In this document: one piece after another, positions 49,581 through 55,300 of the stretch | Layout: each line of letters opens with the position of its first letter | Numbering within the stretch: the stretch's first letter is position 1 | IMG/VR virus record: IMGVR_UViG_3300046171_000231 | Location: 1-64,000 of that record | DNA: 64,000 nt | Direction: 5' to 3' (one strand) | The notes under the pieces: model-generated | What the model was told of the DNA's origin: nothing | Seen by the model: only the letters and a program-made list of their open reading frames with translations | Database searches by the model: none | Made by a program: the position numbers and the translations under genes

Positions 49581-49924
49581 TTAAATCCTTTTGATGTTTG
49601 TTCTTGAATTCTTGCTAATTCATTTTTAGCAACTTCTAGTTGTTCACGAATTAATTTATTTTGTTCCTCATCGTACAAATAAGGTTGTTTGACTAATCTT
49701 TCTAAGCATTTTAACTAATCTTTTTACTCTGCTAATCGGGGTAGCCATCGTCGTCCTCTAATATTTCATCATAATCTTGAGATATAGAAGGAGGTGGAGC
49801 AACATAAGATTCCACATCAGAAAAGACCTCTGCTTTATGTCATCTACCAATAATTCTAAGTTACGAACCATTAGTTTGAGTTTGTCTCTGTCCATAGTTA
49901 TTATTGTTTCAACTATTATAGCAC

Positions 49925-49950
49925 AAAAAAAGGAGGGTAACAACCCCTCC
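49925..49950 (-). terminator. intrinsic terminator adjoining an extended -10 promoter
   Basis: GGAGGG/CCCTCC stem, U7; TGCTATAAT with -10 at 49915-49920. Confidence 0.8.
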
Positions 49951-49958
49951 TTATAATT

Positions 49959-50050
49959 TAGAACTTGTATCCATACAAGAATCTAGCTTCAGCGTAAATG
50001 ATAGTTAGAAATATAGCAGATGCTGCTAAAATTTCTGTTGTTACTAACAT
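49959..50050 (-). CDS. small membrane peptide (MLVTTEILAASAIFLTIIYAEARFLYGYKF)
   Basis: Read manually; TAATG overlap with upstream ORF; 3' end approximate. Confidence 0.55.
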
Positions 50051-50157
50051 TACTTAGCGTGAGCGATGCCACGATATGTGAGTTCGACCTCTTTTGTTTG
50101 CTGAGCTTTTTTGTTGTTGGTGTCGTAAACAACACCACGATAAGTGACTTTTGCCAT
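50050..50157 (-). CDS. DUF4278-like peptide (35 aa, MAKVTYRGVVY...LTYRG)
   Basis: Two TYRG motifs; AGGAG RBS; directly downstream of riboswitch. Confidence 0.8.
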   Translation of the reverse strand: MAKVTYRGVVYDTNNKKAQQTKEVELTYRGIAHAK

Positions 50158-50194
50158 TGGTTTTCTCCTAAAGTAATTGGATGTTTTTAATATC

Positions 50195-50237
50195 CGTTCC
50201 TTCAGTCAACTTGTGCGTCTCCCGTGAGAGATGAACG
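50195..50237 (-). ncRNA. glutamine riboswitch (Downstream-peptide/glnA-type) aptamer, compact copy
   Basis: CGUUCA-UCUC[ucacgg]GAGA-CGCACAAGUUGACUGAAG-GAACG. Confidence 0.8.
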
Positions 50238-50241
50238 AACC

Positions 50242-50471
50242 CGTTCCGAGTCGGCTTACTTGCGTCTTATGTCTCTGATGAATTACAAGCTTCTTCTACT
50301 TTATACTTGAAGTGGTTGATTAAACCCAACTTACTTGCATCATCAAGATATGGATCTTGTTTGATTTCATAAGCGAGTTCCATCCACCTATCACACTTAA
50401 TAGTCCAATGGACTGGTTCGTGACTAGCAATAAGAGTTAAAGCTGATAATAGGATGCCCATAAGATGAACG
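50242..50471 (-). ncRNA. glutamine riboswitch-type aptamer with a whole ORF in its P2 loop
   Basis: CGUUCA-UCUUAUG[187 nt]CAUAAGA-CGCAAGUAAGCCGACUCG-GAACG. Confidence 0.7.
50267..50461 (-). CDS. small protein (64 aa), hydrophobic N-terminus, nested in riboswitch loop
   Basis: ATG in 5' strand and TAA in 3' strand of the P2 helix. Confidence 0.7.
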   Translation of the reverse strand: MGILLSALTLIASHEPVHWTIKCDRWMELAYEIKQDPYLDDASKLGLINHFKYKVEEACNSSET

Positions 50472-50515
50472 TTGTGTTAATAGTAACACATTCACTCTAT
50501 ATATGCAAGTAGTTT

Positions 50516-52305: not shown

Positions 52306-55300
52306 TTATGAACCTTCTAGAGCTTCTATTCTTGTAACTGCCTCTTGTAAAGCTGCGACAAGTAAAGGTACAAGTCTACTTTGATCTATTCCTTGATATT
52401 TTGGATCGCCAGATTTGATGTTCTTATTAGGTTCATCTTCTGAATATACTTCATCTTTTGTTCCTGTAATTGCTTCTGGTACTGCTGTTACTTCATGTGC
52501 TATAAATCCATCACGAGTGCTACTTATATCTCCTATCCAATTAAATCTTGAAGGTTTTAAAGTTTTTAATCTTGCAATACCATCAGATATTGGTACTATA
52601 TTTTCTTTTAATCTATAGTCAGATGATGTGTTATAAGTAACACTGTTAGTTGCAATATCAATGGTTCCACCAGCACCCCAACCTTTTCTAAATTCAACTA
52701 TATCTCCATCAGTACCATTTCTGTTGAGTAGGATTGGATTACCACTAATTCTTGAAACTATAACTTGTGGACCTCCACTTAAAGATGAACCATAGATTGT
52801 TGCACCTGAATTACCAAATAAAGTTCCATAATTACCAATACGTATATCACCACTATCCTCGATTCTCATCGCCTCAGTAAATGAAGTTCCTGAGTTAGGT
52901 TTCACATAAAATCTTGTATTACCAGATCTTCCATCTAACATTATTGAAGAACTATGAAGTGATGATATAGGAGTTGCATCGTTACCATTTGCATCAAATT
53001 TATGATTAACACCTAGAATTGTATATAATCCATTAGAATCATCCCAAGTAGATTGTGTATAAGATGAATCAGAATAATGTCCATCAATACCAAATCTTGG
53101 AACCGCAGACCTCTCTGCTTTAATTGATAGCATTGTCGCTGGTTGACTTTTGTTAATGCCAACTCGACCATTATGATCAATTCTGACTCTTTCTACAGTT
53201 ACGGCTGGATTTGTATCATCAGGACTAGTTAAGAGTCTTATAGATGATCCATGAGGATTTGCACCAACACTTGCAATGTCAAGCATTCTACGATATCTGT
53301 CACCACCTGCTGTTGTTCTTGCAGTATAGTGAGTTAAAAACGCACCTTCACTTTGATATGAAAGAGTAGTATTTGTTTGTTGCGTTCCATTATCTCTTAC
53401 AAATAGATAACCCTCTGATGTGATGCGAAGTCTTTCTGCACCAGAAGTTCCAGAGGTAATATAAACTTCCGTTCCTTCTGCACCTATAGTTGCACGACCA
53501 TATCCACCAGTAGTATTATCTAAAAAGGAAATTGCTGCTTTAGCATCTGATGAACGAGCAACAATAACAGTATTTTGTGTTCCACCATCAACTTCTAAAG
53601 CATATGTTGGAGAGGTGCTATTAATACCAATTTTACCTGCTGATGTGATGCGAAGTCTTTCTGTACCCTGTGTTGCAAATGATACTGGAGTACCAGTTCT
53701 GTAACACCAAAAATCAAATCTTTCATTAGTTGCACCTCCATTAACAAGACCAACTCTTCCTTCAAGACCTGTATTGCTACCATCATTTGCTTCATTACCA
53801 TTCCAAAATGTCATGTATGGCGTTGCAGTAGCATTTGTATTGGTATCCTTGATCATGAACATTCCACGCCAAGGATCGTTGGTTCCTGCTACAGCTAGTC
53901 TCGTACCAGACACTGTATTAATGTTCAACCTAGTAGAGACAGTTGATACACCAGCGACATTTACATTGTCTAAGTTTGTATGACCATCTACATCTAAATC
54001 ATTATTAATACTTACATTACCACTTGAGTTGATGCGAAGTCTTTCACTACCAGCAGTTTCAAATGAAATTGTATCATTACTGGGGAATCTTATTTTTGTA
54101 TTTGCATCATCCCTATGAATTATTGAATCATTGAGTGTTACATCACCATAAACATTGAGTCCTGAATCATATGTGCCTATTTGAAGAACATTATTATGAT
54201 AAAGATTTGCTCCTCCACCATTAGTTCCTCTAAAATATAATTTTGAAAGATCAGCATTACCAATATCAACTCTTGTTGCACCACCAATTTTTAAATCGCC
54301 TGTTCCAGTATCTGTAATATAAGAGTGGCTGCCATTGTGATATATTTTTAGATCTTCTGAATCTCCAACTGATATCCTGTTACTACTACCACCACCATCA
54401 GGAACTCTAATACCTTGTCTTGCAGTTATAATTCCAACAGCAGAAACACCAGCACCAACGTGAATATCTTTTTGTGCTGTTATAATGCCAACTGAATCTA
54501 CGTTAGTTACATCTTCATATGTCAATACACCACCGACTGATAGATTCCCAGTAAATGTTGCAGATGTTCCTACTATATTACCTGAAAAACCACCACTAAA
54601 AGTAGATGCTGTAACAATTCCAGATGCGTTTATATTTCTAGGTGTAATATCTCCAGTGGTAATGTGGTCTGATGCACCTAATACAACGTTACCTGTACGT
54701 CCATAGAAACCACTTACATCCCCTGTTGCTGCTCCAGAGAATCCAAGATGTCTAACTTGTATTCAATCACTAAGGACTTGGAGGTGGTGAACTAAATTCA
54801 ATTACTGTATCTGCAAGGATTCGATATGCTCTGGTTGTATCTTTATCACTTGGGTGTTGTACCACACCATCAAGTGTAACCATAACACTTTGATTATTTG
54901 GTACTTCTCTTGATAATGTAAACTGAGTCGTAGTACCATCACCAGTAAATTGGTCAATTTTTAAATCAGATATATCAAAAGTCTCAATCGTATTTGCAAT
55001 TATGTTTCCCCAGAAAATATCATCTGCAGTTGGTGCGGTTTTGAATTGAATTTTACGACTGTCAACAACTAAAAAACCCTCAGTATATGAGGAGTCTAGA
55101 TTTGCTTTTTGTATTACATTATTGATTGCTATTTGGAGTTGAGCTGAATTAACTATGTCAGCAGAAGATCCTCCACCATGAGTTATCTTGAAAGGTTGTA
55201 TTAACACCGTCAAATGCAGCAGTTAATGTATGTGATGAACCAGAACCTACAGATGATAAATTTATATTTGTATTATTATTTGCGTTTGCTAAACTTGTTG

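What the first reader, a model, noticed from the sequence alone, without database searches (positions are those of the whole stretch)
50050..50237. Second tandem glutamine aptamer leading a DUF4278-like peptide and a membrane peptide
Seen: a compact aptamer (50237-50195) begins 4 nt after the first. It is followed by an AGGAG RBS, a 35-aa ORF with two TYRG motifs, a TAATG-coupled 30-aa hydrophobic peptide and a terminator. Established: Downstream-peptide riboswitches sit before DUF4278 peptides in marine picocyanobacteria, and a glutamine riboswitch controls the glutamine synthetase inhibitor gifB. Inference: the phage reads host nitrogen status through tandem aptamers and makes peptides that may act on glutamine synthetase.
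Basis: partly seen in the sequence, partly recalled or inferred. Interest (0 to 1): 0.62.

Follow-up and report, generated by a model that had tools for sequence, protein, structure and literature searches.

The report
Phage glutamine riboswitch before peptide genes
A marine cyanophage carries two back-to-back glutamine-sensing RNA switches ahead of two tiny conserved peptide genes, which is a known kind of element, but the first switch here (and either switch in related phages) has a whole small gene sitting inside one of its hairpin loops, which I found described nowhere.

Summary
On the minus strand, 50237-50194 is a compact glutamine-type aptamer. It scores 32.0 bits against Rfam RF01739, just under the cut-off of 35. 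A model built only from related phage aptamers gives 61.1 bits (E 3e-13). It starts 4 nt after the 3' end of a first aptamer. An AGGAG site follows, then a 35-aa ORF that passes Pfam DUF4278 (30.7 bits, cut-off 25.3). A TAATG-overlapped 30-aa hydrophobic ORF and a terminator complete the unit. All parts are conserved in hundreds of T4-like cyanophage contigs. P2 and a post-P1 hairpin show compensatory changes.

Tandem glutamine riboswitches, cyanophage copies and the aptamer-DUF4278 link are all published, so the finding is a member of a known kind. The proposed action on glutamine synthetase is not supported. DUF4278 is the N-terminal part of IF17, which is dispensable for GS inactivation.

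The unexpected part is aptamer 1 (50471-50241). It is split by a 64-aa ORF lying in its P2 loop. The start codon is in the 5' strand of P2 and the stop codon in the 3' strand. Across 75 complete tandem loci, either aptamer can be compact or ORF-bearing, in all four combinations, and the long-range P2 co-varies.

The parts
50480..50508 (-). Sigma-70-type promoter of the cassette: TTGCAT (50508-50503), 17-nt spacer, TACTAT (50485-50480). It ends about 8 nt before aptamer 1.
   Evidence: Read. It is homologous to TTGACT-17-TATAAT in S-PM2, TTGCAT-17-TAGAAT in P-TIM68 and TTGACT-17-TAATAT in L082/L045. The consensus scan did not list it. Promoter activity is inferred.
50459..50471 (-). Aptamer 1, 5' half: P1 strand CGUUC (50471-50467), A, then P2 strand UCUUAUG (50465-50459). 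The P2 strand contains the AUG of the 64-aa ORF.
   Evidence: The long-range P2 appears in both the MFE and the centroid fold.
50267..50461 (-). 64-aa ORF lying in the P2 loop of aptamer 1. It belongs to phrog_6471 and has invariant H14, H18, W19, C23, W26 and C59.
   Evidence: (2.6e-15). Third-codon-position bias is 0.50 over 46 loci. The AF2 model has pLDDT 82 and three helices. No fold match was found.
50241..50271 (-). Aptamer 1, 3' half: P2 strand CAUAAGA (50271-50265, containing the UAA stop at 50269-50267), CGCA (50264-50261), GGAACG (50247-50242) and the closing G (50241).
   Evidence: Model R1 finds it at 25.6 bits with P1 and P2 unpaired locally. The partner strands lie about 200 nt upstream.
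50194..50237 (-). Aptamer 2 (the finding): P1 50237-33/50199-95, P2 50231-27/50222-18, CGCA 50217-14, a 2-bp mini-P3 AG/CU, junction GAAG 50203-00, and closing G 50194 predicted to pair with C50215.
50179..50195 (-). Short hairpin attached to P1 (GGAU/AUCC). It uses the last G of P1 and the closing G, so it competes with the bound fold.
   Evidence: Its third pair covaries: AU 23, GC 14, GU 12, UA 6, CG 3 in 66 sequences. It is present in the MFE fold.
50168..50205 (-). Alternative helix CUGAAG (50205-50200) with CUUUAG (50173-50168). It encloses the short hairpin and covers the first two bases of the AGGAG site (50169-50165).
   Evidence: Present in the MFE and centroid folds. It is 97.6% paired in 66 sequences, but with one-sided changes only.
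50050..50157 (-). 35-aa DUF4278 peptide gene with two TYRG motifs.
   Evidence: Pfam 30.7 bits against a cut-off of 25.3. phrog_5049 at 4e-15. At least 523 relatives in IMG/VR. Third-position bias 0.47.
49958..50050 (-). 30-aa hydrophobic (single-helix) peptide gene. Its start overlaps the DUF4278 stop (TAATG).
   Evidence: It is conserved in 55 of 84 loci with ATGA, GTGA or TAATG overlaps. Third-position bias 0.49. No Pfam, PHROG or Atlas family.
49923..49952 (-). Intrinsic terminator ending the cassette.
   Evidence: The same hairpin plus T run is seen in relatives.

Best explanation
The site is the second aptamer of a tandem glutamine riboswitch in the leader of a small, self-contained early-promoter-to-terminator cassette of a T4-like cyanomyovirus. 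The cassette makes a 35-aa DUF4278 (IF17-N-terminus-like) peptide and, by translational coupling, a 30-aa membrane peptide.

The aptamer has the closed-P1 topology of the glnA (type 1) class. It carries the CGCA...GGAACGG core of the Downstream-peptide (type 2) class used by the host. In other words, the long-range G-C closing pair of type 1 is swapped to C-G.

Most likely mechanism (inferred):
- Without glutamine, the 3' part of the aptamer forms a short hairpin (GGAU/AUCC) and a helix CUGAAG/CUUUAG. Together these tie up the region just before and into the AGGAG site.
- Glutamine binding needs the junction GAAG, the last G of P1 and the closing G. Binding therefore melts both structures and frees the ribosome site. 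This makes it a translational ON switch, as shown experimentally for gifB and for a Prochlorococcus DUF4278 gene.
- The two aptamers, 4 nt apart, would sharpen the response.

Aptamer 1 additionally encloses a 64-aa gene. The start codon of that gene is buried in P2 when the aptamer folds. That gene would therefore be favoured at low glutamine and the peptides at high glutamine.
For: Shown:
- Aptamer identity and significance.
- Across 27 compact orthologues, P1, the CGCA and the closing G are invariant, while P2 covaries (CG/UA/GC; 20 cells changed on both sides against 4.5 in shuffles).
- The post-P1 hairpin covaries with all four Watson-Crick pair types.
- The alternative helix is 97.6% paired in 66 sequences and is the predicted ground state.
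- There is no terminator between the aptamer and the start codon.
- The peptide genes are kept open and show third-position bias.
- The peptide passes the DUF4278 cut-off.
- A host cell uses a Glutamine-II aptamer (59.6 bits) before its own 57-aa DUF4278 gene.
- A conserved sigma-70-type promoter lies directly before aptamer 1.

From the literature:
- ON regulation by both aptamer classes, and the model of a helix attached to P1 that melts on binding (PMC6212724).
- Tandem glutamine riboswitches as pseudo-cooperative systems (PMC9481103).

For the split aptamer 1:
- Own-partner P2 averages 5.5 bp against 4.2 bp for swapped partners (3 of 5000 permutations reach the observed value). For ORF-bearing aptamer 2 in relatives the values are 6.9 against 5.0 bp (0 of 5000).
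- Examples of compensation are UCUUAUG/CAUAAGA against UCCUAUG/CAUAGGA, and UCCUUA/UAAGGA against UCCUCA/UGAGGA.
Against: - No ligand binding or expression data exist for any phage copy.
- The Rfam scores are below both family cut-offs.
- The alternative helix shows only one-sided changes, and both of its strands are conserved for other reasons, so its support is weaker.
- That helix masks only 2 nt of the AGGAG site.
- The P-TIM68-like subgroup has a GAGGA site without an obvious CUUUAG partner.
- The MFE z-scores are not significant.
- The permutation controls do not remove phylogenetic relatedness.
Confidence: 0.7

Rival explanations
1. The aptamer is the same, but the switch is OFF. Glutamine binding melts the GGAU/AUCC hairpin, and the freed pyrimidine strand (AUCC) or the pyrimidine-rich 5' strand of P2 then pairs with the purine-rich ribosome site. 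The peptides would be made at low glutamine.
For: The 3' strand of the hairpin (UCC/CCC) and the 5' strand of P2 (UCUCU/UCCU) are complementary to GGA/GGAGA of the ribosome site. The direction of switching cannot be read from covariation.
Against: The UCC-GGA pairing is only 3 bp across a 10-nt loop. Both studied cyanobacterial glutamine riboswitches before DUF4278 genes turn expression ON with nitrogen excess (PMC6212724). The predicted ligand-free ground state already masks the site.
Confidence: 0.17
2. The functional units are circularly permuted aptamers lying between the genes: the 3' half of one, a short loop, then the 5' half of the next. On this reading the ORFs are ordinary genes separated by such units, and the aptamers do not enclose genes.
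For: GAACG of aptamer 1 and CGUUC of aptamer 2 are complementary across a 3-5 nt spacer. RNAfold draws that hairpin. GGA/UCC could close a 3-bp P2.
Against: The permuted P2 averages 2.1-3.3 bp. The cis long-range P2 averages 4.9-7.3 bp in every architecture class. The cis pairing co-varies. Compact standard-topology copies occupy the same two positions in 15 to 18 loci each. The first 5' half follows the promoter at the same distance whether or not an ORF is present.
Confidence: 0.06
3. The aptamers no longer sense a ligand. They persist as conserved flanks for recombinational exchange of small-gene cassettes, or as RNA processing or stability elements, and the peptides are made constitutively early in infection.
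For: All four presence/absence combinations occur among close relatives with peptide identity of 89-97%. The same ORF type appears in either aptamer position (L085, L110-L116). Both Rfam scores are sub-threshold.
Against: Every nucleotide of the known binding core is invariant over 55-66 diverged copies, while the helices covary. That is the signature of selection on the fold, not only on sequence homology.
Confidence: 0.07

Closest known systems
Type 1 glutamine riboswitch (glnA RNA, Rfam RF01739), e.g. the gifB leader of Synechocystis (PMC6212724)
   Same: P1 CGUUC/GAACG closes the aptamer. It has a P2 hairpin and a GAAG junction. A DUF4278-containing gene lies downstream. Control is translational, with a short helix attached to P1.
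   Different: The closing long-range pair is C-G instead of G-C: CGCA...GGAACGG against the consensus CGGA...GGAACGC. P3 is reduced to 2 bp. The score of 32.0 is below the cut-off of 35. The product is 35 aa and lacks the IF7-like GS-binding part.
Type 2 glutamine riboswitch (Downstream-peptide, RF01704) before short DUF4278 peptides of Prochlorococcus and Synechococcus (Yfr6, PMM1846)
   Same: It has the same CGUUCA...CGCA...GGAACGG core. The short peptides carry repeated YRG motifs. The host of a related phage has exactly this arrangement (59.6 bits plus a 57-aa peptide).
   Different: The host form is a single aptamer whose GGAACGG sits in the loop of a 3' hairpin (pseudoknot). The phage form aligns to that hairpin only through non-standard pairs (27.6 bits). 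The phage form is tandem. The phage peptides share a distinct MA[KQ]VTYRG start that was found only on phage contigs.
Tandem glutamine riboswitches (157 doublets catalogued, PMC9481103) and the S-PM2 cyanophage copy in the Rfam alignment (PMC6806525)
   Same: Two aptamers sit a few nt apart. S-PM2 has the same promoter, tandem pair and DUF4278 layout.
   Different: In the window and in most relatives, one or both aptamers carry a complete ORF in the P2 loop. I found no description of this in the papers searched.
ORFs housed in peripheral loops of structured RNAs, such as homing-endonuclease ORFs in group I intron loops (my own knowledge, not tested here)
   Same: A protein-coding insert is tolerated in a hairpin loop while the flanking strands still pair. 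Presence or absence is polymorphic between relatives.
   Different: There is no ribozyme, no endonuclease and no sign of splicing. Here the start and stop codons lie in or beside the closing helix, and some ORFs read through the aptamer core.

Membership tests
Glutamine riboswitch type 1 (RF01739) | Score at or above the Rfam gathering cut-off (35 bits) | tested here: not met
   32.0 bits. The orthologue in P-TIM68 scores 35.4 and S-PM2 scores 33.3.
Glutamine riboswitch type 1 (RF01739) | P1 CGUUC/GAACG closing a P2 hairpin, with a GAAG junction | tested here: met
   All are present. P1 is invariant and P2 covaries in 27 orthologues.
Glutamine riboswitch type 1 (RF01739) | Long-range G-C closing pair (G23-C60 of the crystal construct, PMC6212724) | tested here: not met
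   Both positions are swapped (C50215, G50194), which would keep a C-G pair as in the type 2 consensus. The position mapping is by alignment to the Rfam consensus and is inferred.
Glutamine riboswitch type 1 (RF01739) | Selective binding of L-glutamine | not testable with these tools
   Needs in-line probing or ITC.
Glutamine-II / Downstream-peptide (RF01704) | Gathering cut-off of 33 bits, and a 3' hairpin with GGAACGG in its loop | tested here: not met
   27.6 bits, with seven of the eight pairs of that hairpin flagged as non-standard. A different helix (CUGAAG/CUUUAG) does enclose GGAACGG, so the topology question stays open.
Glutamine-II / Downstream-peptide (RF01704) | Core CGUUCA - hairpin - CGCA ... 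GGAACGG, upstream of a short DUF4278 ORF | tested here: met
DUF4278 (PF14105) | Pfam gathering score | tested here: met
   30.7 bits against 25.3. Residues 3-32 match profile positions 2-32 of 57.
GS inactivating factor IF17/IF7 (GifB/GifA) | IF7-like C-terminal region with the arginines needed for GS binding (PMC6316151) | tested here: not met
   The peptide is 35 aa and matches only the N-terminal DUF4278 part. The complex prediction gave no verdict.
Tandem (pseudo-cooperative) riboswitch | Two aptamers of one class in one leader | tested here: met
   The spacer is 4 nt in the window and 3-5 nt in 75 loci. Only one classical expression platform is visible, after aptamer 2.

The most novel reading that the evidence does not exclude
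Glutamine aptamers of T4-like cyanophages act as gene-enclosing switches. A complete, conserved small ORF (phrog_6471 or phrog_504 type, 49-69 aa) sits in the P2 loop. Its start codon lies in or next to the 5' strand of P2, and its last codons or stop lie in the aptamer's 3' core. Folding of the aptamer at high glutamine would hide the enclosed gene's start while opening the downstream DUF4278 and membrane-peptide genes. Ribosomes on the enclosed gene would unfold the aptamer. One RNA would then give reciprocal, nitrogen-dependent expression of two gene sets. The conserved aptamer halves would also serve as portable flanks that let these small genes be swapped in and out between phages.
Probability: 0.35. 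Interest if true: 0.82.

Novelty: new variant of a known kind. Interest (0 to 1): 0.6.

Why it matters
Its modest value is in showing three things:
- The pairing is near-universal in a large group of marine T4-like cyanophages.
- It is driven by an early-type promoter.
- It uses a core that mixes features of the two described glutamine riboswitch classes, which explains why Rfam annotation misses most copies.

The larger point is the gene-in-aptamer architecture. If the split aptamers bind glutamine, they would be a natural example of a riboswitch whose ligand-stabilised helix spans about 200 nt of translated RNA. That would couple metabolite sensing, translation of an enclosed gene and translation of downstream genes. 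This is directly testable with existing isolates (P-HM2, P-SSM4, P-TIM68, S-PM2). It also bears on how phages read host nitrogen status.

Tried and rejected
- Rfam at gathering thresholds over the whole window found nothing.
- Complex prediction of the peptide with a Prochlorococcus glutamine synthetase monomer scored 0.00, 'no answer'. This is not evidence either way.
- Foldseek of the 64-aa ORF model against the PDB found no match at E <= 0.001.
- The ESM Atlas look-alikes for the hydrophobic peptide and the 64-aa ORF were only unnamed viral clusters.
- Pfam and PHROGs found nothing for the hydrophobic peptide.
- A weak aptamer-like hit at 53468-53558 (13-16 bits) lies in coding sequence, lacks CGCA, and is chance.
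- The genome-contig scan for the peptide found only phage contigs inside single-cell or binned assemblies, not host chromosomes.
- The papers by Ames and Breaker (2011) and Ren et al. (2015) are not held. What I say of them comes through PMC6212724.
- The circularly permuted reading of the aptamer halves was considered and scored lower.

Full report
**Context.** The window is the first 64 kb of a 235,761-bp IMG/VR virus record rated complete. Its nearest isolates are T4-like cyanomyoviruses of Prochlorococcus and Synechococcus: P-TIM68, P-HM1/2, P-SSM4 and S-PM2. ThyX and a 2OG-Fe(II) oxygenase gene lie just downstream on the same strand.

**Observation.**
- Aptamer 2 runs from C50237 to G50194.
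- Its P1 is CGUUC/GAACG. Its P2 has 5 pairs around a CACG loop. The core CGCA, the junction GAAG and a closing G are all present.
- It starts 4 nt after the GGAACG of a preceding aptamer.
- AGGAG (50169-50165) lies 7 nt before the ATG of a 35-aa ORF with two TYRG motifs.
- The stop of that ORF overlaps (TAATG) the start of a 30-aa hydrophobic ORF.
- A strong terminator follows.

Rfam finds nothing at its curated thresholds. A local scan gives RF01739 at 32.0 bits (cut-off 35) and RF01704 at 27.6 bits (cut-off 33). The 35-aa product passes Pfam DUF4278 (30.7 against 25.3).

**Is it more than chance?** I collected 80 IMG/VR loci through the peptide. At least 523 stretches there encode a relative. 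I added P-TIM68, P-HM2, P-SSM4 and S-PM2. A covariance model built from 55 distinct compact aptamers of these loci, without the window, scores aptamer 2 at 61.1 bits (E 3e-13). It finds no other full copy in the genome.

In 27 orthologous leaders, P1, CGCA and the closing G never vary. P2 shows CG/UA/GC exchanges, with 20 cells changed on both sides against 4.5 in shuffles, and 96.6% of cells are paired.

The sub-threshold Rfam scores have a simple cause. Relative to the type 1 consensus, the two partners of the long-range closing pair are swapped: CGGA to CGCA, and GGAACGC to GGAACGG. This is the type 2 arrangement. The 3' topology, however, is not that of type 2.

**Expression platform.** Two conserved structures follow or overlap the 3' part of the aptamer.
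- A hairpin GGAU/AUCC (50195-50179). Its third pair takes all four Watson-Crick forms: AU 23, GC 14, GU 12, UA 6, CG 3.
- A helix CUGAAG/CUUUAG (50205-00 with 50173-68). It encloses the hairpin and reaches 2 nt into AGGAG. It is 97.6% paired in 66 sequences, with one-sided changes only.

Both are in the predicted ligand-free minimum-energy and centroid folds. Both use nucleotides that the bound fold needs: the junction GAAG, the last G of P1 and the closing G.

This matches the published picture, in which glutamine binding forms the long-range pair and melts a short helix attached to P1, freeing a ribosome site. Both cyanobacterial classes turn DUF4278 genes ON under nitrogen excess (PMC6212724). 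I therefore favour a translational ON switch. The direction is inferred, not shown. There is no terminator between the aptamer and the start codon, so control by transcription termination is unlikely.

**The genes.**
- The DUF4278 peptide, the hydrophobic peptide and the ORFs described below all stay open across loci. They show excess third-position change: 0.47, 0.49 and 0.50/0.39.
- The hydrophobic peptide is present in 55 of 84 loci. Its start always overlaps or abuts the DUF4278 stop (TAATG, ATGA or GTGA), which indicates coupling.
- It is missing in subgroups with longer, Cys-containing DUF4278 variants, such as P-TIM68.
- It has no family in Pfam, PHROGs or the Atlas.
- A Prochlorococcus single-cell genome that also holds a related phage contig has its own 57-aa DUF4278 gene behind a textbook Glutamine-II aptamer (59.6 bits).
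- The phage peptide's N-terminal motif occurs only on phage contigs.

**Function of the peptide.** The GS-inhibitor idea rests on DUF4278 being part of IF17. But DUF4278 is the N-terminal moiety, which is reported to be dispensable for GS inactivation. The short picocyanobacterial homologues lack the GS-binding C-terminus (PMC6316151; PMC6212724). My one complex prediction gave no verdict. The target remains unknown.

**What the surroundings show.** The cassette starts at a conserved sigma-70-type promoter: TTGCAT-17-TACTAT at 50508-50480, which corresponds to TTGACT-17-TATAAT in S-PM2. This lies behind the terminator of the upstream gene (50647-50625).

Aptamer 1 begins about 8 nt after the -10 box, but it is split.
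- Its 5' half, CGUUCA plus UCUUAUG, is at 50471-50459.
- Its 3' half, CAUAAGA-CGCA...GGAACGG, is at 50271-50241.
- A 64-aa ORF (50461-50267) fills the P2 loop. Its AUG is in the 5' strand of P2 and its UAA is in the 3' strand.
- RNAfold draws this 7-bp long-range helix in the MFE and centroid folds.
- The phage model finds the 3' half alone, with its P1 and P2 partners missing locally.

P-TIM68 and S-PM2 have both aptamers compact. P-HM2 and P-SSM4 have an ORF in both. Over 75 loci with both aptamers complete, the four architectures number as follows (aptamer 1, aptamer 2; O = ORF-bearing, C = compact): 28 (O,O), 18 (O,C, as in the window), 15 (C,C) and 14 (C,O). All four types occur among phages whose peptide is 89-97% identical to the window's.

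**Is the long-range P2 real?** Own-partner strands pair better than swapped partners.
- Aptamer 1: 5.5 against 4.2 contiguous pairs; 3 of 5000 permutations reach the observed value.
- Aptamer 2: 6.9 against 5.0; 0 of 5000.
- Duplex energies agree.
- Clear compensations occur across 140-200 nt: UCUUAUG/CAUAAGA against UCCUAUG/CAUAGGA against UCCAAUG/CAUUGGA, and UCCUUA/UAAGGA against UCCUCA/UGAGGA.
- A circularly permuted reading (3' half of one aptamer with the 5' half of the next) gives only 2.1-3.3 pairs.

These controls do not remove shared ancestry, so I treat the fold as well supported but not proven.

**The enclosed ORFs.**
- They belong to phrog_6471 (aptamer 1 type; the window ORF scores 2.6e-15) and phrog_504 (aptamer 2 type). 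The two types look distantly alike.
- Many read through the aptamer core. One type ends ...IIGRK, encoded by GGA CGC AAG UAA. The other ends ...DAKAD, encoded by GAC GCA AAA GCC GAC UGA.
- The window type also occurs in the aptamer 2 position (L085, L110-L116).
- Of 80 loci found through the ORF itself, 77 carry the aptamer 3' half at the ORF end. Most of these carry the 5' half at the start codon. In several, the script over-extended the ORF through the 5' half. One group has AGUUCA in place of CGUUCA.
- Three distant homologues stand free of any aptamer.
- The family has invariant H14, H18, C23 and C59, and folds as three helices (pLDDT 82). No structural match was found.

**Comparison with what is known.**
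- Glutamine riboswitches in T4-like cyanophages are mentioned in genome papers (PMC9964418, PMC9602691).
- S-PM2 is in the Rfam family alignment (PMC6806525).
- Tandem glutamine riboswitches are catalogued, with 157 doublets (PMC9481103).
- The DUF4278 link and ON regulation are established in cyanobacteria (PMC6212724).

So the finding as written is a further member of a known kind. I found no description of ORFs inside glutamine or other riboswitch aptamers in the library searched. That is not proof of absence, and two key papers are not held.

**Verdict.** The element is a new variant of a known kind because of its mixed core and, above all, the gene-enclosing aptamer architecture seen at aptamer 1 here and at aptamer 2 in relatives.

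Noticed in passing
window 50241-50471 (minus strand): Aptamer 1 of the tandem pair is split by a conserved 64-aa ORF lying in its P2 loop. The start codon is in the 5' strand of P2 and the stop codon in the 3' strand. Relatives show all four compact/ORF-bearing combinations for the two aptamers.
   Followed up: yes
L003 820-1005 (P-SSM4): A manA RNA (184 bits) lies directly upstream of the tandem aptamers. It is overlapped by the annotated CDS PSSM4_169.1 (875-1048), which may therefore be a mis-call. The window has no manA RNA.
   Followed up: no
window 49915-49943 (minus strand): An extended -10 promoter (TGcTATAAT) for the next gene starts right after the cassette terminator, with a -35-like TTGTTA inside the terminator loop. 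The same terminator-then-TATAAT layout recurs in relatives.
   Followed up: partly
L100 and L101 (IMG/VR), about 560-640: An ORF-bearing aptamer whose 3' half has a full P3 hairpin (GUGGU...ACCAC) before GAAGGAACG. This is closer to the type 1 consensus, and it is followed directly by the platform hairpin rather than by a second aptamer.
   Followed up: partly
L022, L024, L025, L043, L045, L049, L063, L076 (leader between aptamer 2 and the start codon): A longer platform (60-62 nt instead of 30-38) with an extra conserved GNRA-capped hairpin inserted after GGAACGG. Its role is unknown.
   Followed up: no
alignment A5 (window 50270-50461 and 41 relatives): The enclosed-ORF family has invariant His14, His18, Cys23 and Cys59, plus Trp19 and Trp26. 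This could be a metal site or a disulfide. The N-terminus is a short hydrophobic helix.
   Followed up: partly
L165, L166, L168: Distant homologues (38-45% identity) of the enclosed-ORF family stand free, with neither aptamer half beside them. The protein family is therefore not confined to aptamer loops.
   Followed up: partly
L087-L092 (genome contigs): The phage peptide motif turns up in assemblies labelled Prochlorococcus, Dehalococcoidia, Rhodospirillaceae, Poseidoniales and Myxococcales. The best hit is a 189,106-bp contig of the same length as an IMG/VR viral contig (L010). These look like phage contigs inside single-cell or binned genomes.
   Followed up: partly
window 50233-50246 (minus strand): GAACG of aptamer 1 and CGUUC of aptamer 2 can pair with each other across GGUU, and RNAfold draws this hairpin. 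It would disable both P1 helices at once and could couple the two aptamers.
   Followed up: partly
window 53468-53558 (minus strand): There is a weak aptamer-like match (13-16 bits) inside a coding region. It has CGUUCA and GAAGGAACGG but no CGCA. I judged it to be chance.
   Followed up: yes
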